Below, one piece after another: positions 19,986-58,594 of a stretch of DNA of 64,000 nucleotides. The position numbers were made by a program, and so were the translations under genes. Below the pieces are notes generated by a model, which saw nothing but the letters and a program-made list of their open reading frames with translations, was not told the origin of the DNA and made no database searches. Where the stretch lies: positions 198,651 to 262,650 of the IMG/VR virus record IMGVR_UViG_3300029267_004162; one strand, given 5' to 3'. Numbering within the stretch: the first letter of the stretch is position 1; each line of letters begins with the position of its first letter.

Positions 19986-20240
19986 ATGACACACCCTGCA
20001 TTACAGGCTCTTTCTAGAGGGCCACGAAATGTGATGCGACGATTGTTAACCGGAGCCTCTTTACACATACAGCCCCTTGGGTATCGTCTTTTAGGCGACG
20101 GTCGTCCTCCATGGTGTGTCACCGATTGGTGTGTACGTGATCTGGTATCGCGAGGATTACTTTACACACCTACACTCAGAGCGTACCCAACTGCTCTCGC
20201 TAAGACTTTGCAAAAAGAATTAGTTGGTGGACTTCGTTAG
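19986..20240 (+). CDS. hypothetical protein
   Basis: 84 aa; AAGGAG RBS. Confidence 0.5.
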   Translation: MTHPALQALSRGPRNVMRRLLTGASLHIQPLGYRLLGDGRPPWCVTDWCVRDLVSRGLLYTPTLRAYPTALAKTLQKELVGGLR

Positions 20241-20262
20241 AAAGCCCAGAGGAATGTGAGTT

Positions 20263-20472
20263 ATGTCAACACCAATTGGTACCCTGCCAATTCTTAACGT
20301 CAAGGACCAAGAGCTAGTAGTACATGTAGCCGATGGCAAGTTATTTGTATCTACGGGTGGGGACATGTTGTTGGTTTATGACCAAGACACAAGCATAATC
20401 GCAAGGGGTTTGTCCCGTTCGTTGCGGGCCAGAGTTGCGTCATTCGTTAAATCCTTCTTTATTCATTGGTGA
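20263..20472 (+). CDS. hypothetical protein
   Basis: 69-aa ORF within the operon. Confidence 0.5.
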   Translation: MSTPIGTLPILNVKDQELVVHVADGKLFVSTGGDMLLVYDQDTSIIARGLSRSLRARVASFVKSFFIHW

Positions 20473-20478
20473 AGACGC

Positions 20479-20985
20479 GTGATCACATATTTGGACATGG
20501 ATGGCGTTATCGTTGACTTCAACAAGGGGGTATCGGATAAGTTTGGAGTAGATGTTACGGACGCGGACACCAGGGCTTTACATAAATTGATTGGGGTTAG
20601 TTCCACCCTTTTTTGGAAAACCCTCAATGAATCCAGTACGTGGTGGGCAGAGTTGGAACCCTATCCATGGTTGGAAGAACTAGTGGATTTGATCGAAAAA
20701 CGGGGTTCATGGTATCTTTGTACCGCTGCTGCCTCTCTTGCTGCTCTTCATGGCAGAGTTAGATGGATTAAGAGGATCTTCGGTTCTCAGTTTGATCGGT
20801 TTGTTTTTACTCGGCACAAACATCTGTTAGCTCGACCCCACACATTGCTGATTGATGACACGCCAAAACAGGTAGAGGATTTCAGTAGCGAAGAGGGGGC
20901 TAGAGCTGTGCTTTTTCCTCAGCCCTGGAATCAGGCCACTTATGACATCTCGGAATTTATGGATGTTTTGAGGGTAAGTCAATGA
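20479..20985 (+). CDS. 5'(3')-deoxyribonucleotidase, HAD family
   Basis: LDMDGVIVDF (DxD), KHLL and LLIDD motifs. Confidence 0.88.
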   Translation: MITYLDMDGVIVDFNKGVSDKFGVDVTDADTRALHKLIGVSSTLFWKTLNESSTWWAELEPYPWLEELVDLIEKRGSWYLCTAAASLAALHGRVRWIKRIFGSQFDRFVFTRHKHLLARPHTLLIDDTPKQVEDFSSEEGARAVLFPQPWNQATYDISEFMDVLRVSQ

Positions 20986-22058
20986 GTTCTCATGCGATTG
21001 AAGTCATAACCATTCCTAAGGTGAAAAAACACCCTAACGCGGATACCCTGGGGTTGGTCGATATTTGGGGTTGGTCCTGTTGTATACGGCTGAATGATTT
21101 TAAGGAAGGCGATTTAGCCGTCTATATTCCACCTGACTATATGGTACCTGATATTGAGGCATTTCAGTTCCTAAAGGACTCCAGTAGTGACCGATGGCGT
21201 CGGATTCGGGTACGTCGATTTCGCGGGATTTTGTCGCAGGGTTTAGTATGGTTTGCACCGGAGGGCACCAAAGAGGGTGATGATGTCATGGAACTGATGG
21301 GTATCACCCGCTACGAGCCGCCTCTTCCGACGAGTTTCAACACAGATAATGAAACTGGCCCACATGGTTACTACCCCAAGTATGATGTCGAGAATTACCG
21401 CCGCTATGGCAGCGGTATCTTTGTTGAGGGTGAAGAGATAGTAGTAACCGAGAAGATTCATGGTTGTAACGCTCGGTTTGTTTGTACTCTCCCCAAGTCA
21501 GATAAGACTTGGCCAGATGGTACTCCGATAGGTCCTTGTGACGCTGCCTTCCCCAACGAAAGTGAAACACTAAGGATGTTCTGTGGTAGTCGAACCAATT
21601 GGAAGAAAAAGGACGAAAAGAGTCCCTGGTGGCAAACCCTCCAACAAAATCCGGCTATCGAAACCTGGTGTCGCGCTCATCCTGGACTGGTCCTTTATGC
21701 TGAGGTGTACGGGCAGGTTCAGAGTCTCAAATATGGAGCAAATCGTAATCAGTTCTTTGTAGCAGTTTTTGATATACTTGATCTGGATGGGAATTGGTTA
21801 GAATTTGATGAAGCCTTCACCCTTGTTTCAGAGGTGCCGGGATTGAATTGGGCACCTGTGGTTTATCGGGGTCTCTGTAATGAGGAAGTTCTTGAGCTGG
21901 CGGAGGGGGACAGCCTTATCCCAGGGGCAAACCACCTTAGAGAAGGCGTGGTGGTTCAACCAATTAAAGAGAGACGCGATAATATGTGTGGTCGGGTAAA
22001 GCTCAAAATTGTGAGTAACCAATATCTCGAGGGTAAGAAAAGTCATAGGGGAGCTTAA
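20982..22058 (+). CDS. ATP-dependent RNA ligase (DRB0094/Rnl2-like family)
   Basis: N-terminal HPNADTL...GDLAVYIPPD...RG.LSQG domain; ligase motifs TEKIHG, EVYG, VFD, EGVVV, KLK. Confidence 0.92.
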   Translation: MSSHAIEVITIPKVKKHPNADTLGLVDIWGWSCCIRLNDFKEGDLAVYIPPDYMVPDIEAFQFLKDSSSDRWRRIRVRRFRGILSQGLVWFAPEGTKEGDDVMELMGITRYEPPLPTSFNTDNETGPHGYYPKYDVENYRRYGSGIFVEGEEIVVTEKIHGCNARFVCTLPKSDKTWPDGTPIGPCDAAFPNESETLRMFCGSRTNWKKKDEKSPWWQTLQQNPAIETWCRAHPGLVLYAEVYGQVQSLKYGANRNQFFVAVFDILDLDGNWLEFDEAFTLVSEVPGLNWAPVVYRGLCNEEVLELAEGDSLIPGANHLREGVVVQPIKERRDNMCGRVKLKIVSNQYLEGKKSHRGA

Positions 22059-22078
22059 CAAGCAGACGGATGTAGGGA

Positions 22079-22199
22079 ACGCCGCCGAATCCAGGCGTGA
22101 CAATCAGCAGAGCTGATCCGGTACCGGCGCGGGTATCGGGAGTGGTAAGGGTGAGGAATTCCGCCCGAGGCCCAAGCCCTTACCACTTATTTTCTTTTT
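22079..22199 (+). ncRNA. candidate structured RNA or terminator region (four consecutive hairpins)
   Basis: ACGCC/GGCGT, TCAGC/GCTGA, CCGGTACC/GGTATCGG and 11-bp AGTGGTAAGGG/CCCTTACCACT, followed by a T-rich tract. Confidence 0.4.
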
Positions 22200-22220
22200 A
22201 ATTCGTTAGGAAGGAATGAT

Positions 22221-22323
22221 GCTGTGGCTACATAGCGTGCTGGCTCGGCCACTGGAGAGCGGTATACCCGCCTGTAGGAAAACGAGTGCTGCTTGTACAG
22301 CCGGTAGGAGTCCGGCCCACAAC
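22221..22323 (+). ncRNA. candidate tRNA-like RNA
   Basis: GCTGTGG/CCACAAC acceptor-like stem stacked on a GCCGG-TAGGAGT-CCGGC T-arm-like hairpin; no canonical D or anticodon arms. Confidence 0.45.
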
Positions 22324-22396
22324 TTTAATGGAAGGAGTCACTCATTCGTTAGGAGAAGTAATGGGATTGTAGCTCAGTTGGTAGAGCAACGGCCTT

Positions 22397-23008
22397 CAGG
22401 AAAAATAGGAGCCTTCTGTGTGGAAGATCGAGAGGGTTGTCAGTGCCAGTCCTTACAGCTTCGCTGTTGTAAGGAAGCACCCTAGCTTATGCACATGATT
22501 ACGTGCCTATGCACAGGGTCGTCATGGAGAACATGATCGGTAGACTTCTCGATTCCGATGAAGTGGTTCATCAAGAACGGGAACAGGAAGGATAATCGAC
22601 CTAAGAATCTGGAACTCCTGTCTAACGCCGAACACGCTAGGAGACATGGATTTGACCAGAAACAAAAGTGGTGCGATTTCGTCTGTCCTATTGTGGTGAA
22701 TCGTTCTCAAGAAAACACAATCGAACTCACCTAGGGAAGGGGAGGGGAGATTGTACCTGCTGTAGCAGGTCTTGTGGAACCTCTTTCGCTAGAAAGAGAA
22801 ATCTTCAAAGTGCAACTGCAGAAGTGGAGAGTGCCATATCGGGGAACGTCGTAAGAGTGTACAAGAAGTATGCTCACGATAATCCCGAGGAAACCGTCTG
22901 ACGCGGGATCCGTAGAGGCCATACGCACTCAGCCTGAGATGGTTAAGAGATGGTCCAGCCGACAAGCCAGCCCTAGTGTTGGTGGTTATGGAAACATGAT
23001 GTCGGATG
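22397..23008 (+). mobile_element. group I intron (612 nt) in the tRNA anticodon, with a degenerate HNH ORF
   Basis: 5' exon ends in U and can pair with GGAGCC (22408-22413); terminal G at 23008; core-like ATATCGGGGAAC / AATCCCGAGG (P4), GTAGAGGCCATAC and AAGAGATGGTCC (P7 GGCCAT/ATGGTC). Confidence 0.82.
22418..22901 (+). pseudogene. frameshifted HNH homing endonuclease inside the intron
   Basis: Three frame changes (near 22484, 22572, 22689) join MWKIERVV...RKHP / YVPMHRVVMENMIGRLLDSDEVVH / KNGNRKDNRPKNLELLSNAEHARRH / CGESF...CCSRSC. Confidence 0.85.
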
Positions 23009-23060
23009 TTAAGCCGTGAGTCGTGGGTTCGAGCCCCACCAGTCCCAATTATAAATCTTC

Positions 23061-23133
23061 AGGACCGTAGCTCAGTGTGCAGAGCACCGCCCTCTTAAGG
23101 CGGGGGTCGCAGGTTCAAATCCTGCCGGTCCTA
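23061..23133 (+). tRNA. tRNA-Lys(CUU)
   Basis: AGGACCG/CGGTCCT, GCTC/GAGC, CCGCC-CTCTTAA-GGCGG, GCAGG-TTCAAAT-CCTGC; D-loop lacks the GG; no encoded CCA. Confidence 0.93.
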
Positions 23134-24690
23134 TTTGGGGTCATACGTCTTCTGGGGAATGTCATCCTGCGGTCTTGTCAAAATTGTAATGCCTCATTTG
23201 ATATTTCTGAAGCCGAGGTGGCTCGGGGGAGGGGGAAGTATTGTTCTCAAGCGTGTTATAAAGAGTCCTTCTTAGAGGAGAGGCTTTGTCAATGTGGAAC
23301 AAAGTTTAAAACCAAAAAGGGGAAACGGGGTCGTAAAACTTGTTCTAATCGGTGTGCAAAATCCAGAGTATTGAGCGAAGAAACTCGCGATAAAATTAGC
23401 AACACCTTATCTCGAGGAGAGCATCAGAAGAAGAGGGGGAAATACACCAAAAAATGTCACCGCTGTAAAACCTTATTCGAAACATACTCTTCTAAGAGCC
23501 GTCTTTGTGGGAGTTGTAAGCAATCTAAAAAATGCAAGGTCTGCAACCGGGATTTGGTCCAAAAAGAGTGCGTGTGGTGTAAAAAAGCAGTTAGCCAAAA
23601 GCCCTTACCTAAGCGGTGCCGCAATAAACGAGGGGCCAAGCTGTTGGTAGAAATCTTGAATCTAACTCAGGACAATAACCAACAGCTCTGTGAAGACTTG
23701 GGCGTGGATTTCGTAGTGGGGAAATTGGCTATTGAATACCAGAACCCAAAGTATCCCTATTCCACAGACAACGACCACGAGGATCAGTTGATGTCGCGGG
23801 GGTTTGTTCCTCATCCGATTAGTTGGAGTTTGGAGGGGGAACCTGATTCGAAAGAGCGTTTGCGGCTGGAAGCCGATATCATTGATTTTTGTGCGGCCAA
23901 CGATAATCCGTTTGTATTCACATACGACAAAATCGCTTTTCAAGACCAATACGCCCGTTTACAAAAGACTACTTCCCTTAAAGGCTTCTGCTATTGTAGA
24001 ACGGCCATGGAGTGGTACCACAAACATCTGTGGACAATGAAGACGTCCAGAGCCGAAGTTGATCCCATATCCTATTGGCGGTGCAACCCGGCGAAAATAA
24101 CCGCCAATAGAATAAAATACGCCAATTTGTCTCCAACTTCCCTACGTCGCTATTTTAAGCTTTTTGACATGGTTCCAACCATGTTCCAGGATTCATTAGG
24201 TAAGCGAATGGCCCTCATGGTTGACGGGCCGGAGATAGTGGACCCCTTTGCTGGTTTTGGTGGTCGAATGTTGGGGGCTTGTGCTATTGGGAAGACATAC
24301 ACTGGATTCGACATCAACCCCTGGACTTGTAGTGCTAACGTTATCATGGCTAAGGAAATGGGGCTAACCGGCGTACGTATTCATCACGCTGATTCTTCTC
24401 AGATGGATCCCGTTGAATGTGACGGAGTAATTACTAGTCCGCCTTTCTTCAACAAGGACGAATACGGGGATGGGGGCTATGATTCGCTTGAGCAATATCA
24501 ACGCGCGATTCATGAGACGTTCAAGCGAATCACTCTCCGGGACAAGGCCATCTTGGATTTCAAGCCGGTTCAGGGGTGTTCTTTAGATGATTTTGTCGCG
24601 GCCCTGCCGTATCGGGTCCAGAAGATAGAAGAAGTGAATTTCGGGGGGTTGGGCCGTAAATCTATACACCACTGGGTGGTGGCCTGCTAG
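23077..24690 (+). CDS. multidomain protein: Cys-rich Zn-finger repeats, NUMOD3-like motif, putative PD-(D/E)XK nuclease and amino-methyltransferase
   Basis: CxxC..F..CSxxC repeats; LSEETRDKISNTL; DFVVGKLAIEYQ; VDPFAGFGGRMLGA, FDINP, ITSPPFFNKDEY. The track start overlaps the tRNA, so the real start must be after 23133. Confidence 0.75.
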   Translation: MQSTALLRRGSQVQILPVLFGVIRLLGNVILRSCQNCNASFDISEAEVARGRGKYCSQACYKESFLEERLCQCGTKFKTKKGKRGRKTCSNRCAKSRVLSEETRDKISNTLSRGEHQKKRGKYTKKCHRCKTLFETYSSKSRLCGSCKQSKKCKVCNRDLVQKECVWCKKAVSQKPLPKRCRNKRGAKLLVEILNLTQDNNQQLCEDLGVDFVVGKLAIEYQNPKYPYSTDNDHEDQLMSRGFVPHPISWSLEGEPDSKERLRLEADIIDFCAANDNPFVFTYDKIAFQDQYARLQKTTSLKGFCYCRTAMEWYHKHLWTMKTSRAEVDPISYWRCNPAKITANRIKYANLSPTSLRRYFKLFDMVPTMFQDSLGKRMALMVDGPEIVDPFAGFGGRMLGACAIGKTYTGFDINPWTCSANVIMAKEMGLTGVRIHHADSSQMDPVECDGVITSPPFFNKDEYGDGGYDSLEQYQRAIHETFKRITLRDKAILDFKPVQGCSLDDFVAALPYRVQKIEEVNFGGLGRKSIHHWVVAC

Positions 24691-24712
24691 GTCTTGTTAG
24701 GTTTTTGTTGTA

Positions 24713-24742
24713 TTGACAGATACCCCCCTCTTATGGTATAAT
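24713..24742 (+). promoter_or_regulatory. sigma70-type promoter (extended -10)
   Basis: TTGACA (24713-24718), 18 bp, TG-n-TATAAT (24737-24742); flanks match the 7345 promoter. Confidence 0.85.
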
Positions 24743-24900
24743 GGAAATAGTGAAAGACATTTTATTAAGAGGTTTGGAACAGGTCGCAAGCCAAGCGGTA
24801 GTTCGGATGTCCGAGGATGTCCAGTCCTTGTTATCGACATTATGGACAAATCGATAACTTTCTGAGCTATTCGCTGTTCCCTAAAACCAGGAGGTGCAAT

Positions 24901-25812
24901 GTGTGTGGCCCTTATGGACACGCGTTCGTAAGTGAGATTCCCGTCCAAACACCGGATTTGGATGGTAACTTCGACGATGTTGAAGGAGATGGTGAAACGG
25001 GCAACCCAGTCCCTGTCGCTCCAGATAAAAACCTCCCTAGTGACGGGGCGGTGGGACTTGCGTTGGGAGATGAGCAAAAGAAGACCAGTCGGTCCGAAGC
25101 TGCTCGTAAAGCCTGGGAAACCAGAAAGAAACTGTATGGTCCCGGTGGACGAAAACCGAGATCACTGGTATTACCCAGTGGTCAGGTGTTCTTACCTGGG
25201 TACCCTGCTTTGAACAGTCATCATGAAATTCTTACCCGGCATTCTTTGTCTAATCAAAGACGAAGACGCAGGGCAGGATGGGTTCCATGTGGGCTCCATG
25301 TGCATGATGGTTCTCTGCTTCTTCAAAACAATCGTGGCCACTCCACCCTTCCTCTCGCTGATGTTGATATCAAATGTGCCGAGCAAAATTGGCTCACTAG
25401 TATGCGGGGTGGGGGATTGTGGGATTTCGTAGCGTTCCATGGTGGTCGTCTCCAAGACAAATGGGAATGGATGAAAGAATTCCACAGGTGGTTGGATTTG
25501 CCGTTTGTCTATGGGCAGCTCAAGGGTAGGGTCGCCAAAGACAACTATGTCAAGATGCTGGAACTCCAGGTTTATCTTGATGTCGTGCAAGGAATAACCA
25601 TGCCGGGGGCTGTGCTCTATACTCAGGCCCACATAAGGGGAGACATCTACGCAGAGTTAGATGAGGTGTGTAAAAAGCAAGACACACTGAAAGTGGTTCA
25701 GCAGAAATTGGCTAAAAGCATGATACAACTTTGGGGCCGCGATCCGATGGAAGCCGCTGACACTTTGGTAGATCACCCCAATGACTTTATTGGTGAGCAT
25801 GTTCTTAACTGA
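24901..25812 (+). CDS. hypothetical early protein
   Basis: In-frame GTG at 24901 follows AGGAGG (track start 24817); contains RSEAARKAWETRKK. Confidence 0.65.
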   Translation: MCGPYGHAFVSEIPVQTPDLDGNFDDVEGDGETGNPVPVAPDKNLPSDGAVGLALGDEQKKTSRSEAARKAWETRKKLYGPGGRKPRSLVLPSGQVFLPGYPALNSHHEILTRHSLSNQRRRRRAGWVPCGLHVHDGSLLLQNNRGHSTLPLADVDIKCAEQNWLTSMRGGGLWDFVAFHGGRLQDKWEWMKEFHRWLDLPFVYGQLKGRVAKDNYVKMLELQVYLDVVQGITMPGAVLYTQAHIRGDIYAELDEVCKKQDTLKVVQQKLAKSMIQLWGRDPMEAADTLVDHPNDFIGEHVLN

Positions 25813-25816
25813 CATT

Positions 25817-25980
25817 CGACGAGCGTGGGCGGGCAGTGTTTCCCCGGACACGTCTGCCCCCTCGTCGGACGAATCATTTACTTGGGGAGCAGGGTTGGCA
25901 TCACAAGCCCCTGCTCCCCACTCTTTTTCGCCTCGGGATAGAGTAGGGCATCCACGTACCTACCTCGCCCTGCTCTATCC
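25817..25980 (+). other. structured intergenic region, three strong hairpins (the middle one terminator-like)
   Basis: CGACGAG..GGGCAG/CTGCCC..CTCGTCG; 12-bp TGGGGAGCAGGG/CCCTGCTCCCCA followed by CTCTTTTT; 14-bp GGATAGAGTAGGGC/GCCCTGCTCTATCC. Confidence 0.6.
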
Positions 25981-25998
25981 CACCCCCCCCCTTCGGTA

Positions 25999-26547
25999 AT
26001 GGAAGTGACTCGGCCAATAAGAGAGGTACCGGAGATTCGCATGAAGATCAGTTTAAAATTAACAACTGCTAATTTGAGACGATTGACCCCGGATCAAGTG
26101 CAAACGTCTTTGAAAATGCTAGAAGCCCAAGCGGATCAGATTCGTAAGGATATGGATAGGAATCAAAGGCTACTGGGCCATCTAAACGATCAAATAGGGG
26201 ATTGTGTAAGTGTAGCTCGTTTACTCCGAGATATCGTGTGGATAGGAGAAAAACCTGTTGTTGTGGACTCCCGGCTGGATGAAACTTGTCTATCTAGTCC
26301 TTTTCCTCAGAATAAACGTTTCGGTATCGTGAGGAAAGACTGGAATGGACAGGGAGTAACGGGGTGGACTCTTGATATTTACTTCCCAAACACTCTTCAC
26401 GCGAATACGTGGCTGGGGCCGGGTTGGCGTCGAAAAGAAGCAATAGAATATGCCAAACATTGGGTTGTGAAAGATCGCGTTTTCTGTCGGCAATTCGCAA
26501 AAGATCATCCATCACTGACTGTCTTAAAATCACGTTCCAAAATGTAG
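25999..26547 (+). CDS. hypothetical protein with N-terminal coiled coil
   Basis: 182-aa ORF. Confidence 0.6.
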   Translation: MEVTRPIREVPEIRMKISLKLTTANLRRLTPDQVQTSLKMLEAQADQIRKDMDRNQRLLGHLNDQIGDCVSVARLLRDIVWIGEKPVVVDSRLDETCLSSPFPQNKRFGIVRKDWNGQGVTGWTLDIYFPNTLHANTWLGPGWRRKEAIEYAKHWVVKDRVFCRQFAKDHPSLTVLKSRSKM

Positions 26548-26701
26548 GACACCACAAGAAGCAGCAAACACGTGGGCAGCGTTACAAGAGGACTATGAGC
26601 GGCTGTCAGTTGGGAATTGTAATGATTGGCCTGTTGCTTGCCTTTGGGTCTAGGTTCATCGGGGCGATTGTGAGTGGACTACTTAATTAGGAGTAGGTGC
26701 G

Positions 26702-27217
26702 ATGAAACTACAAGTTGAGTTGGATGATACCAAAGAATTCACCGGGGGTTGGAGTATGGATCAAATCCCTGTTCTTTCGGCACTCCGCGCAGTCACTTTC
26801 GTGGATAAACTCAGTATCCTGGAATTCGGAACAGGAAAGAGCACTGAGCTTCTAGCAAAATTGCTCCGCGACAAGAGCGTTGACTACCGCTATGTTAGCT
26901 ATGAGAACGACCCCACCTTCGTGTGCCCGGATTCCTCAATAGAGACAATCTTCTGGGAAGTCTTTCCGGCTCAGATTGTTGACGGTATATTTGACCTCAT
27001 CATCAATGATGGCCCGAATGGGGTTAGACGAAAACTATGGTATGAGTTACATCGTAAAAATGTGAGGCCAGGGACGGTTCTGCTGCTGGACGGTTTTTAC
27101 CACTACGTAGAATTTTTGGAAGCCTTGGATTTGAACTACACCTATGAGATCCTCTCTGACCATGTAGCGAAAAGGGGAACTTGTTGGCGTGTGGTTAAGG
27201 TTCTGAGTGTGCGATGA
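26702..27217 (+). CDS. class I SAM-dependent methyltransferase-like protein
   Basis: ILEFGTGKST, SYEND, FDLIINDGP, PGTVLLLD. Confidence 0.8.
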   Translation: MKLQVELDDTKEFTGGWSMDQIPVLSALRAVTFVDKLSILEFGTGKSTELLAKLLRDKSVDYRYVSYENDPTFVCPDSSIETIFWEVFPAQIVDGIFDLIINDGPNGVRRKLWYELHRKNVRPGTVLLLDGFYHYVEFLEALDLNYTYEILSDHVAKRGTCWRVVKVLSVR

Positions 27218-57606: not shown

Positions 57607-57678
57607 AGCCCCGTAGTTCAGTGGCAGAACGCAAGGCTTTGATCCTTGAAGTCGCAGGTTCGAATCCTGCCGGGGCTT
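57607..57678 (+). tRNA. tRNA-Gln(UUG)
   Basis: AGCCCCG/CGGGGCT, GTTC/GAAC, CAAGG-CTTTGAT-CCTTG, GCAGG-TTCGAAT-CCTGC. Confidence 0.93.
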
Positions 57679-57691
57679 TGGAGAAATAACA

Positions 57692-58594
57692 ATGGATATA
57701 GATGCAGCGTCTTACACCCCTAAAGACATTCCCAAGTATTTTCGGGTAGCCTTTGATTTCTTACCAATTAGTGACAACCCCCCGACTACTGTAAAACAAT
57801 TATCTCAGATGAAGCTAGTGGGAGTCAAGGGAATTAGTTCCGCTGGGACCATAGCCATGAATTGGTTTGGAGTCGCTCGGGACGGTATGCTGGCTATGCC
57901 AGGTGCAAAGCTGATTACCCTAAATAAGCTCTCACGAATTATGTATGACAACCCCAAGTATCTGATGCAGGATAACATGGCGGCTTTGAAACGCCTGTTT
58001 GCTGGTCAGGACACGGCTGGGGTTATTCATCGGGTGATGGAATACGCCGCCGCCATGGCCAAGAAAAAACTGGGGCGAGCTGATATTCATCATGCCATGC
58101 AGTATTCAGCGGTGTGGCAATCATTAGCTTCTGTAGCTCGTAAGCAATCCACCAAATTCAATACCGCTGAAAAACTAGCTCGTTGGGTTATGGCCTCCAT
58201 CCCTGAGGCTGTTACTTCCTATCATCGAGATGATCTATTGAAAGTAGATTACAAAATCTGGCTGCGTATGATAATCGAGGGATTGGGAGAGGTTGGTCGG
58301 GTGTATTCAGACGAGGAAGAATGGGTTATCAAAGGTGAGACTTTGAAGATTCCGCCCCGTTCTACCCTATACATCATGTATCCTAAAGCCACTAAAGAAC
58401 ACATAGAGATGTGGGCTGATCCCAAGCAGCGAGATTTCATGCGATATACTGGCGGGGCGCATATTATGGAACGACGAGAAAGAGTAGATGAGCTAATAAA
58501 AAAGTTTGGGTTAACTCGTAAGTTCATCACCAGGAAGGTTGATCCCCAAAAGTTTGATCGACAGCGAGCTAAATATCTTACCAATAGGTCATGA
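57692..58594 (+). CDS. hypothetical protein
   Basis: 300 aa; GGAG RBS. Confidence 0.7.
   Translation: MDIDAASYTPKDIPKYFRVAFDFLPISDNPPTTVKQLSQMKLVGVKGISSAGTIAMNWFGVARDGMLAMPGAKLITLNKLSRIMYDNPKYLMQDNMAALKRLFAGQDTAGVIHRVMEYAAAMAKKKLGRADIHHAMQYSAVWQSLASVARKQSTKFNTAEKLARWVMASIPEAVTSYHRDDLLKVDYKIWLRMIIEGLGEVGRVYSDEEEWVIKGETLKIPPRSTLYIMYPKATKEHIEMWADPKQRDFMRYTGGAHIMERRERVDELIKKFGLTRKFITRKVDPQKFDRQRAKYLTNRS

What the first reader, a model, noticed from the sequence alone, without database searches (positions are those of the whole stretch)
23077..24690. Zn-finger/NUMOD3/endonuclease/DNA-methyltransferase fusion next to the tRNAs
Seen: three CxxC..F..CSxxC repeats (the same motif as the C-terminus of the intron HNH), a NUMOD3-like LSEETRDKIS motif, a D..V...AIEY nuclease-like motif and a full amino-methyltransferase (DPFAGFGG...SPPF). 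There is no canonical in-frame start right after the tRNA, but GGGGA-ATG-TC at 23159 is one base out of frame with the coding VILRSC. Inference: a homing-endonuclease-like mobile gene fused to, or inserted in, a methyltransferase. This gives a self-protecting cut-and-methylate unit resembling a one-gene restriction-modification or phage-competition element, possibly inactivated at its start.
Basis: partly seen in the sequence, partly recalled or inferred. Interest (0 to 1): 0.62.

Follow-up and report, generated by a model that had tools for sequence, protein, structure and literature searches.

The report
Decayed homing-endonuclease/DNA-methyltransferase fusion beside tRNA
A jumbo-phage gene directly behind a tRNA fuses a homing-endonuclease-like half (zinc ribbons plus a Vsr-type nuclease fold, here apparently dead and without a normal start codon) to an intact DNA amino-methyltransferase, and belongs to a large viral family of such nuclease-methyltransferase fusions for which I found no published description.

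Summary
In one frame, 23161-24690 (+) encodes four Cys4 zinc ribbons, a NUMOD3-like helix, a Vsr/I-Bth0305I-like nuclease fold and a complete amino-methyltransferase module (DPFAGFGG then SPPF; model pLDDT 94). It is a true fusion: six relatives at 35-50% identity are single ORFs with the same domain order.

The interpretation needs three changes.

1. In this phage the nuclease half has decayed. Only 5 of 15 family-conserved positions survive, the general-base His is Tyr, and 14 residues are deleted. The methyltransferase half keeps 52 of 57.

2. No ATG/GTG/TTG start lies between the tRNA and the first zinc knuckle. The ATG at 23159 sits one base off, as if one G of an ancestral ATG-GTC had been lost. 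Six assemblies agree on the sequence.

3. The methyltransferase is a permuted relative of N6/N4 DNA methylases. Its nearest solved folds are tRNA m2G enzymes (Trm11), so an RNA substrate is not excluded.

- All six relatives of this subtype sit directly beside a tRNA-Met gene.
- The same methyltransferase module is fused in hundreds of viral proteins to Vsr-like (DUF7487), LAGLIDADG, DUF723 or HTH modules.

The most likely reading is a degenerating homing-endonuclease/methyltransferase element of which only the methyltransferase is still under selection.

The parts
23061..23133 (+). tRNA-Lys(CTT), directly upstream. The listed ORF start (GTG 23077) lies inside it.
   Evidence: ARAGORN; Rfam tRNA 71.5 bits.
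23154..23169 (+). Start region. SD-like GGGGA 23154-58; ATG 23159-61 lies one base ahead of the coding frame; in-frame GTC 23161, ATC 23164 and CTG 23167. No in-frame ATG/GTG/TTG comes before the first zinc knuckle.
   Evidence: Sequence. Relative P0002 begins MVIQNC, aligned to window N-VILRSC. SD energy is -5.5 for ATC/CTG against a median of -4.2 for ORF starts and -2.4 for random positions. There are no differences or indels in four assemblies, and a second IMG/VR contig is identical.
23161..24690 (+). Coding frame of the fusion protein: 509 codons from Val 23161, stop TAG 24688-24690.
   Evidence: There is a single copy in the 262,650-bp virus record.
23176..23355 (+). Zinc ribbons 1 and 2 (CxxC..CxxxC; CxC..CxxxC).
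   Evidence: Cys columns are invariant among relatives. The model shows beta-hairpins at pLDDT 84-93.
23371..23418 (+). NUMOD3-like helix (LSEETRDKISNTLSRG).
   Evidence: Helix 73-84 in the model. The column pattern R.LS.E is shared with relatives. Pfam NUMOD3 is not reached here but is hit in 3 of 75 distant kin.
23455..23580 (+). Zinc ribbons 3 and 4 (CxxC..CxxC twice).
   Evidence: Sequence; invariant Cys columns C134, C137, C146, C149 of alignment A1.
23608..23898 (+). Vsr / I-Bth0305I-like (EDxHD-type) nuclease fold, degenerate. Asp183 is kept (23707-09). Tyr198 (23752-54) stands where relatives have His. A 14-residue segment is deleted.
   Evidence: VIA-align: Vsr 1cw0 Z 7.6, DUF559-like 3hrl Z 7.3, I-Bth0305I 3r3p Z 6.9. 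Family profile against PDB: 3r3p is the top hit, E 0.0047. Only 5 of 15 conserved columns are kept.
23779..23793 (+). First in-frame ATG (23791, Met211), preceded by GAGGA (23779-83). It is a possible internal start that would give a 299-aa methyltransferase-only product.
   Evidence: Sequence; SD energy -5.9. This is inference only.
23929..24216 (+). Helical N-terminal subdomain of the methyltransferase module, conserved across the whole superfamily.
   Evidence: Alignment A2; model helices 17-112. Whole-module structural matches to viral clusters have TM 0.79-0.89.
24217..24687 (+). Rossmann-fold catalytic core. Motif I DPFAGFGG is at 24241-24264 and motif IV SPPF at 24436-24447, with I before IV.
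   Evidence: pLDDT 94.2. Trm11 Z 18.5. The profile matches an N4C DNA methyltransferase (8s9m) at E 1.2e-10, in permuted order. 52 of 57 family-conserved columns are kept.

Best explanation
This is a free-standing homing-endonuclease-type gene fused in one reading frame to a DNA amino-methyltransferase. It is lodged directly behind a tRNA gene of a 262-kb phage.

The protein in order:
- an N-terminal half of four zinc ribbons, a NUMOD3-like helix and a Vsr/EDxHD-type nuclease fold, which is the architecture of I-Bth0305I-type homing endonucleases;
- a C-terminal 260-residue module that is an autonomous methyltransferase. It is a relative of the N6/N4 DNA methylases with motif I ahead of motif IV. 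The TSPPF motif favours N4-cytosine.

In intact relatives the nuclease half probably cuts DNA of competing phages near tRNA genes and so spreads the gene. The methyltransferase either marks the carrier's own DNA against that cut or serves as useful anti-restriction cargo.

In this phage the endonuclease half is in decay: the active-site His and Glu are lost, a segment is deleted, one zinc knuckle is shortened, and the ATG is displaced by a one-base loss. The methyltransferase half is still under purifying selection. If a product is made, it starts at a weak non-canonical codon (ATC 23164 or CTG 23167) or at the internal ATG 23791. Either way it acts only as a methyltransferase.

Shown: the domain folds, the fusion, the decay asymmetry, the start anomaly, the tRNA adjacency and the superfamily architectures. 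Inferred: the DNA substrate, N4C, homing, expression, and any coupling between cutting and methylation.
For: - Fusion and order: relatives P0002, P0003, P0005, P0009, P0011 and the L007 ORF are single ORFs with the same layout.
- Nuclease fold: Vsr Z 7.6, DUF559-like 3hrl Z 7.3 and I-Bth0305I Z 6.9 are among the four best rows (the other is a mitoribosomal chain, Z 7.3). The family profile hits I-Bth0305I first, E 0.0047. The architecture and catalytic residues of that family come from PMC3239194.
- Decay asymmetry: the nuclease domain keeps 5 of 15 conserved columns. The methyltransferase module keeps 52 of 57, and all five changes are conservative.
- Methyltransferase: model pLDDT 94.2. Relatives P0010, P0011, P0012 and P0014 pass Pfam's N6_N4_Mtase gathering score. 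45 of 75 distant kin hit the same family. Whole-module structural kin are viral clusters auto-named DNA methylase, including ParB_N fusions.
- Coupling to nucleases: the module is fused to DUF7487 (which holds a Vsr-like motif), to LAGLIDADG_2, to DUF723 and to HTH modules.
- Niche: 6 of 6 loci of this subtype have tRNA-Met(CAT) beside the start, five of them 9-45 nt upstream on the same strand. Distant kin with other N-termini are not beside tRNAs, so the adjacency follows the endonuclease module and not the methyltransferase. Precedent: T4 SegB in the tRNA cluster (PMC2330249).
- Start: six assemblies are identical.
Against: - The nearest solved structures are tRNA m2G methyltransferases: Trm11, TrmN and Trm14 at Z 17.2-18.5, against 14.9 for the next row. 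The gene also neighbours tRNAs and an RNA ligase. An RNA substrate is therefore not excluded.
- The window's own protein is below Pfam's cut-off for N6_N4_Mtase (16.9 against 26.7 bits).
- The Z scores for the nuclease fold are middling.
- I found no endonuclease-free 'empty site' relative, so mobility is not demonstrated.
- No RNA data were available, and only contigs rather than raw reads could be laid.
- A 1.5-kb frame without a stop and without a start could equally be a very recent pseudogene.
Confidence: 0.6

Rival explanations
1. It is a tRNA-modifying enzyme. A Trm11-like exocyclic-amine (m2G-type) methyltransferase is brought to phage tRNAs by zinc-ribbon RNA-binding modules. It is co-transcribed with the tRNA it modifies, perhaps to protect that tRNA from host anticodon nucleases.
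For: The best solved-structure matches are tRNA m2G enzymes: Z 17.2-18.5, colinear, and about 3 Z units above the rest. aTrm11 is the best single-sequence PDB hit. All six close relatives sit beside tRNA-Met. The neighbours here are two tRNA-Lys genes and an RNA ligase.
Against: There is no THUMP or other known tRNA-binding domain. TIGR01177 scores 26 bits against a cut-off of 316. The N-terminal modules are those of DNA homing endonucleases. Kin with the same methyltransferase module but LAGLIDADG, DUF7487 or NUMOD3 N-termini are not beside tRNAs. Relatives pass Pfam's DNA-methylase threshold. The whole-module structural kin include ParB_N-DNA methylase fusions.
Confidence: 0.13
2. The gene is an active one-gene cut-and-methylate (restriction-modification-like or phage-competition) unit in this phage, and it is translated full-length.
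For: Nuclease fold and methyltransferase lie in one chain. The same pairing recurs with different nuclease types across the superfamily. An SD-like GGGGA lies 5-8 nt before in-frame ATC/CTG. The whole 509-codon frame is open.
Against: The catalytic His (the position of I-Bth0305I H213, whose Ala mutant was used as catalytically inactivated; PMC3239194) is Tyr. Two conserved Glu are lost, 14 residues are deleted, and only 5 of 15 conserved positions are kept. There is no canonical start.
Confidence: 0.1
3. It is a recently dead pseudogene. Loss of one G at the ATG abolished translation, and no product of any kind is made.
For: The ATG is one base out of frame exactly where relative P0002 reads M-V-I. 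The gene-finder's GTG 23218 has no SD (energy -0.2) and would cut the first zinc ribbon. No promoter-like site lies between the tRNA and the gene. The neighbouring intron HNH gene is also broken.
Against: 1.5 kb remains open, and 52 of 57 conserved methyltransferase positions are intact. Two usable alternatives exist: ATC/CTG with an SD, and ATG 23791 with GAGGA.
Confidence: 0.17

Closest known systems
EDxHD-family homing endonucleases (I-Bth0305I of Bacillus phage 0305phi8-36; phage Hef)
   Same: N-terminal modular DNA-binding part with NUMOD-type motifs, followed by a Vsr-like nuclease domain. It is the top sequence-profile hit in PDB (E 0.0047) and among the four best structural matches (Z 6.9). 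It is phage-borne and selfish (PMC3239194).
   Different: Here there are four zinc ribbons and a C-terminal methyltransferase. The gene is free-standing behind a tRNA instead of inside an intron or intein. In this copy the His and Glu of the composite motif are replaced.
Beta-class N6/N4 DNA amino-methyltransferases (Pfam PF01555; M.PvuII, N4C methyltransferase 8s9m)
   Same: The motif sequences match: P..F..lA...DPF.G.G and TSPP(F/Y). Profile E is 1.2e-10. Several relatives pass Pfam's threshold.
   Different: The order is circularly permuted, with motif I before motif IV. The window protein itself is below the Pfam cut-off. It also has an extra conserved helical subdomain in front of the core.
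THUMP-linked tRNA m2G methyltransferases (aTrm11, TrmN, Trm14)
   Same: Best solved-structure match of the catalytic core, with the same motif order (Z 17.2-18.5, rmsd 2.2-2.9 over 160-171 residues).
   Different: No THUMP domain is present. Sequence identity is 12-18%. The N-terminal modules are of DNA-endonuclease type. Whole-module matches to viral 'DNA methylase' clusters are far better (TM 0.79-0.89 against 0.50).
Type IIG / IIC single-chain restriction-modification enzymes (e.g. MmeI, BpuSI; from general knowledge)
   Same: A nuclease domain and an amino-methyltransferase in one polypeptide. Cutting and protective methylation could share one DNA-recognition part.
   Different: Those have a canonical PD-(D/E)xK nuclease, a gamma-class N6A methyltransferase and a C-terminal TRD, and they are bacterial defence genes. 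Here the nuclease is Vsr-type, with homing-endonuclease DNA-binding modules, and the genes are viral. PADLOC gives only weak methyltransferase hits.
T4 SegB, a free-standing GIY-YIG homing endonuclease in the tRNA gene cluster (PMC2330249)
   Same: The genomic niche: a selfish endonuclease gene lodged among phage tRNA genes.
   Different: The nuclease family differs, and SegB has no methyltransferase.
ShiLan element, an HNH endonuclease inserted in frame in a phage DNA methylase (PMC11855218), and GIY-YIG/COG4123 N-methyltransferase fusions (PMC1564403)
   Same: A homing-type nuclease and a methyltransferase read as one protein.
   Different: ShiLan is an insertion inside the methylase, and the GIY-YIG fusions are bacterial. 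Neither has a Vsr-like nuclease or this methyltransferase family.

Membership tests
EDxHD (I-Bth0305I-type) homing endonucleases | Vsr-like nuclease fold | tested here: met
   Residues 149-250: Vsr 1cw0 Z 7.6 (96 aligned, rmsd 3.3), 3hrl Z 7.3, 3r3p Z 6.9. Family profile against PDB: 3r3p E 0.0047. The Z scores are middling, but Vsr-type nucleases head the list.
EDxHD (I-Bth0305I-type) homing endonucleases | Conserved composite catalytic motif (Glu, Asp = Vsr D51, His = Vsr H69, Asp = Vsr D97) | tested here: not met
   The window keeps Asp183 but has Gly181 for Glu and Tyr198 for His, and the RD..K segment is altered or deleted. Seven of nine relatives keep all of these residues. Residue roles are from PMC3239194.
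EDxHD (I-Bth0305I-type) homing endonucleases | N-terminal NUMOD-type DNA-binding modules | tested here: inconclusive
   LSEETRDKIS forms a helix and the columns are shared with relatives. Pfam NUMOD3 gives no hit on this protein, although 3 of 75 distant kin hit it.
EDxHD (I-Bth0305I-type) homing endonucleases | Site-specific cleavage and homing (presence/absence among related genomes) | not testable with these tools
   Only identical copies of this phage were found, so no empty-site relative is available.
Pfam PF01555 N6_N4 DNA methylase (beta class) | Score above Pfam's gathering threshold | tested here: not met
   The window scores 16.9 bits against 26.7. Relatives P0010 (31.0), P0011 (36.9), P0012 (33.2) and P0014 (32.1) pass.
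Pfam PF01555 N6_N4 DNA methylase (beta class) | AdoMet motif I (FxGxG) and catalytic motif IV ((D/N/S)PP(Y/F)) | tested here: met
   DPFAGFGG at 24241-64 and SPPF at 24436-47. D121, G125, R129, Y140 and P188 are invariant in 53 sequences.
Pfam PF01555 N6_N4 DNA methylase (beta class) | Beta order of motifs (IV...TRD...X, I) | tested here: not met
   Motif I precedes motif IV. The profile aligns to 8s9m in two pieces in swapped order.
Pfam PF01555 N6_N4 DNA methylase (beta class) | Methylation of DNA (m4C or m6A) | not testable with these tools
   No methylome or long-read data were available.
Trm11/TrmN/Trm14 tRNA m2G methyltransferases | Catalytic Rossmann core with the same motif order | tested here: met
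   Z 18.5, 17.7, 17.5 and 17.2; Foldseek E 3e-8.
Trm11/TrmN/Trm14 tRNA m2G methyltransferases | N-terminal THUMP (tRNA-binding) domain and the family score | tested here: not met
   Pfam finds no THUMP domain. TIGR01177 scores 26.4 bits against a cut-off of 316.55.
Single-chain (Type IIG/IIC-like) restriction-modification enzymes | Nuclease and methyltransferase in one polypeptide | tested here: met
Single-chain (Type IIG/IIC-like) restriction-modification enzymes | Active nuclease whose cut is blocked by the enzyme's own methylation | not testable with these tools
   The sequence predicts a dead nuclease in this copy. Coupling in intact relatives is untested.

The most novel reading that the evidence does not exclude
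The family (here a decayed member) is an undescribed class of viral single-chain 'homing restriction-modification' enzymes. A long-target homing-type nuclease (Vsr-like, or LAGLIDADG in a sister group) is permanently coupled to a methyltransferase that imprints immunity on the carrier genome. One subfamily is aimed at tRNA-Met gene regions of competing phages.
Probability: 0.3. Interest if true: 0.8.

Novelty: new variant of a known kind. Interest (0 to 1): 0.55.

Why it matters
Homing endonucleases are thought to escape self-cutting by disrupting or diverging their own target. Restriction enzymes do it by methylation. A large virus-only family that joins homing-type nucleases of at least two unrelated folds to one methyltransferase module would link the two strategies.

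The family is substantial. The representative search gave 739 hits. At least 98 of the top 150 carry an N-terminal extension of 190 or more residues. Several Atlas clusters hold more than 50 members each.

If the halves are coupled, these proteins would be ready-made long-target nuclease/methylase pairs for study. The strict placement of one subfamily behind tRNA-Met genes points to a testable target.

For this particular phage the practical message is smaller. The annotation should read 'DNA methyltransferase with degenerate N-terminal homing-endonuclease-like region, start uncertain', not an active nuclease.

Tried and rejected
- Assembly error at the start: rejected as far as contigs can show. 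Four Logan assemblies from three studies, at depth 20-26, show no difference or indel over 22300-24800. A second IMG/VR contig is 100% identical over 20001-27000. These may not be independent of the source sample, and raw reads were not available.
- GTG 23077 as the start: rejected, because it lies inside the tRNA.
- Two ORFs joined by error: rejected, because relatives are single ORFs.
- Zinc motif 'same as the intron HNH C-terminus': only a pattern resemblance, BLASTP E 4.7.
- Stand-alone relatives of the N-terminal half: none found by word search.
- Cultured phage genomes: only weak methyltransferase-core matches.
- Foldseek against PDB with the N-terminal model: nothing at E <= 0.001. Only VIA-align and the profile search found the Vsr family.
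- Pfam on the nuclease domains alone: only marginal DUF2726, DUF559 and RAP hits.
- Profile of the nuclease domains alone (A5) against PDB: nothing meaningful.
- Synteny search for an endonuclease-free allele using both flanking genes: only the same phage came back.
- Source names for kin: all 'hypothetical protein'.
- Literature: no paper holds 'DUF7487', and no paper describing this fusion type turned up.
- Rfam group I intron model on the split tRNA: no hit.
- An immediate -1 slip after AUG 23159 would reproduce M-V-I, but I know of no such mechanism, so I did not adopt it.
Full report
**Where it lies.** The window is the last 64 kb of a 262,650-bp virus record that CheckV rates complete, with 46.6% G+C. 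The reported ORF 23077..24690 begins inside tRNA-Lys(CTT) 23061-23133, so real coding can start only after 23133.

Upstream lie three things:
- an RNA ligase gene (20982-22058, Pfam RNA_ligase plus the PHA02142 OB domain);
- an NT5C-like nucleotidase gene;
- a second tRNA, Lys(UUU), split by a 612-nt insert (5' exon 22363-22396, 3' exon 23009-23049) that carries frameshifted remnants of an HNH endonuclease.

A perfect sigma-70 consensus promoter follows the gene at 24713-24742. No promoter-like site lies between the tRNAs and the gene.

**The observation.** Residue numbers count from Val at 23161. The frame holds:
- four Cys4 zinc ribbons (23176-23256, 23287-23355, 23455-23517, 23533-23580);
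- the NUMOD3-like helix LSEETRDKIS (23371-23400);
- a nuclease-like stretch around GVDF..LAIEY (23701-23739);
- methyltransferase motifs DPFAGFGG (24241-24264) and SPPF (24436-24447).

The ATG at 23159 is one base ahead of the coding frame. The in-frame codons there are GTC, ATC and CTG. Relative P0002 starts M-V-I-Q-N-C where the window reads N-V-I-L-R-S-C. That fits the loss of one G from an ancestral ATG-GTC.

Four Logan assemblies of sediment and seawater metagenomes (three studies, contigs of about 40 kb, depth 20-26) show no difference or indel over 22300-24800. A second IMG/VR contig is identical over 7 kb. These may share the source sample. Only contigs could be laid, so rare variants are not excluded.

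**The methyltransferase half.** Family scans on the window protein are weak:
- Pfam N6_N4_Mtase, 16.9 bits against a cut-off of 26.7;
- TIGR01177 (Trm11-like), 26 bits against 316;
- phrog_12517 (function unknown), E 7.6e-8.

The exhaustive representative search with the C-terminal 269 residues gave 739 proteins at E <= 1e-3. Fourteen of them are at E <= 1e-30, followed by a gap to E about 1e-14. Four of the close relatives pass Pfam's own threshold for N6_N4_Mtase, and 45 of 75 distant kin hit that family.

A 53-sequence alignment shows invariant D121, G125, R129, Y140 and P188. Its profile matches an N4-cytosine DNA methyltransferase (8s9m) at E 1.2e-10, but in two pieces in swapped order. 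It matches archaeal Trm11 colinearly at E 1.2e-8.

The AlphaFold model (pLDDT 94.2) is a helical subdomain followed by a Rossmann core. Its best solved-structure matches are the tRNA m2G enzymes Trm11, TrmN and Trm14, at Z 17.2-18.5 against 14.9 for the next row. Matches over the whole module are much better in viral libraries:
- Pithovirus and phage proteins auto-named N4C DNA methyltransferase (TM 0.64-0.75);
- Atlas clusters, all viral, at TM 0.79-0.89.

I therefore read the module as a permuted relative of the N6/N4 DNA methylases. The Thr-Ser-Pro-Pro-Phe motif is the type seen in N4C enzymes; that point rests on general knowledge and on the 8s9m and 1boo alignments. An RNA substrate is not excluded.

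**The endonuclease-like half.** A model of residues 1-250 (pLDDT 76) gave nothing significant with Foldseek. VIA-align placed residues 149-250 on Vsr endonuclease (Z 7.6), a DUF559-like protein (Z 7.3), two RAP-type modules (a Toxoplasma mitoribosomal chain at Z 7.3, which I take to be RAP-type, and FASTKD4) and the catalytic domain of the homing endonuclease I-Bth0305I (Z 6.9). The profile of the N-terminal halves of the family hits I-Bth0305I first in PDB (E 0.0047).

I-Bth0305I defines the EDxHD family: NUMOD-type DNA-binding modules followed by a Vsr-like nuclease. Its catalytic residues are Asp196 (Vsr D51), His213 (Vsr H69, the general base) and Asp222 (PMC3239194).

Relatives of the window protein keep the corresponding pattern: a Glu in the SK.E helix, E-I-D, E-Y-x-G-x-W-H and R-D-x-x-K. 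The window protein does not. It has G-V-D and I-E-Y-Q-N-P-K-Y, lacks 14 residues after that, and has lost the helix Glu.

In numbers, 5 of 15 family-conserved columns survive in the nuclease domain, against 52 of 57 in the methyltransferase module, where all five changes are conservative. One zinc knuckle is CxC instead of CxxC. A second relative, P0010, shows the same kind of nuclease decay with an intact methyltransferase.

**Family context.** All relatives lie on phage-like contigs. In six of six loci of the zinc-ribbon/Vsr subtype a tRNA-Met(CAT) gene is the immediate neighbour of the start. In five of them it sits 9-45 nt upstream on the same strand:

| Locus | Position of tRNA-Met(CAT) relative to the gene start |
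|---|---|
| L002 | 18 nt upstream, same strand |
| L004 | 9 nt upstream, same strand |
| L005 | 31 nt upstream, same strand |
| L006 | 44 nt upstream, same strand |
| L007 | about 14 nt upstream, same strand, once the truncated gene call is corrected |
| L001 | opposite strand, 91 nt upstream |

The tRNAs themselves are only about 55% identical, so this is not one recent cassette. Relatives with other N-termini (DUF723 repeats, GNAT) sit among T4-like structural genes. Distant kin with LAGLIDADG, DUF7487 or NUMOD3 N-termini are not beside tRNAs. The adjacency therefore follows the endonuclease-like module and not the methyltransferase. That argues for DNA-level targeting, as with T4 SegB in the tRNA cluster (PMC2330249), over a tRNA-modifying function.

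In this phage other genes also start right after tRNAs, so co-transcription with tRNAs is a general habit here.

**The superfamily.** Of 75 distant kin, 24 carry DUF7487, 13 carry LAGLIDADG_2, many carry HTH domains and 3 carry NUMOD3. DUF7487-type members contain a Vsr-like D-F...x-D-G-x-F-H motif ahead of the methyltransferase. Atlas clusters of more than 50 members each, all viral, pair the same module with DUF7487, DUF723, LAGLIDADG or ParB_N, or carry it alone at about 300-350 aa.

The existence of the module on its own suggests that it is an autonomous enzyme. Its repeated pairing with nucleases of different folds suggests a functional link. Neither point is tested. No source gives these proteins a name, and my literature searches found no description of this fusion type. 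The nearest published ideas are an HNH element inserted in a phage methylase (PMC11855218) and bacterial GIY-YIG/N-methyltransferase fusions (PMC1564403).

**Expression.** There are four candidate starts:

| Candidate | Position | Shine-Dalgarno | Duplex energy | Product |
|---|---|---|---|---|
| ATC | 23164 | GGGGA, 5 nt upstream | -5.5 | near full length |
| CTG | 23167 | GGGGA, 8 nt upstream | -5.5 | near full length |
| GTG (the gene-finder's choice) | 23218 | none | -0.2 | lacks half of the first zinc ribbon |
| ATG, first in frame | 23791 | GAGGA, 7 nt upstream | -5.9 | 299-aa methyltransferase only |

For comparison, the median energy is -4.2 for ORF starts of this genome and -2.4 for random positions. 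The last product has the size of the stand-alone forms. These values are suggestive at best. No RNA run holds the sequence.

**Verdict.** The gene is a member of a large viral family of homing-endonuclease-like/methyltransferase fusions for which I found no published description. In this phage it is a decaying copy: the nuclease is predicted dead and the start is displaced, while the methyltransferase is conserved. The 'self-protecting cut-and-methylate' mechanism remains a reasonable hypothesis for intact relatives, but it is not supported for this copy.

Noticed in passing
window 22363-23049 (+): A tRNA-Lys(UUU) gene is split in the anticodon loop by a 612-nt insert (22397-23008). The insert carries remnants of an HNH endonuclease in three different frames (22558-22734, 22668-22901, and DEVVH just upstream), so that gene is broken. 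ARAGORN misses the tRNA, and Rfam finds only the 5' half weakly and no group I intron model. Intron-less look-alike tRNAs in the metagenomes join exactly at 22396/23009.
   Followed up: partly
window 20479-22058 (+): An NT5C-like 5'-nucleotidase and an RNA ligase (RNA_ligase plus the PHA02142 OB domain) lie directly upstream of the two tRNA-Lys genes. This arrangement recalls phage tRNA-repair counter-measures against anticodon nucleases that cut tRNA-Lys.
   Followed up: no
window 24713-24742 (+); second copy at G000:C1:156778: There is a perfect extended sigma-70 consensus promoter (TTGACA, 18 nt, TG-n-TATAAT) just after the gene. A near-identical copy of about 38 nt lies elsewhere in the genome.
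   Followed up: partly
window 57607-57692 (+); G000:C1:143816-144465 (-): Other genes of this phage also begin 14 nt or less after a tRNA: tRNA-Gln followed by the ORF at 57692, and tRNA-Met followed by a small zinc-ribbon ORF. This suggests that tRNAs are used as 5' processing points of mRNAs.
   Followed up: no
G000:C1:20421-20513 and 198241-198330: ARAGORN reports a 93-nt tRNA-like gene with a four-base anticodon (cata) and a 90-nt tRNA-Asn just upstream of the window. Both are unusually long and might also hold inserts.
   Followed up: no
L004 7394-8065; L002 327-2912: In relatives' loci the fusion gene sits inside tRNA clusters. In L002 the order is tRNA-Met, the gene, tRNA-Ile(TAT), tRNA-Arg. 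In L004 a TilS-like ATP_bind_3 gene lies nearby.
   Followed up: no
L008 845-5404: In a T4-like contig, two DUF723/DUF4379 repeat proteins (464 and 568 aa) stand directly before a GNAT-methyltransferase fusion (P0007) behind the major capsid gene. This is another variant architecture of the same methyltransferase module.
   Followed up: no
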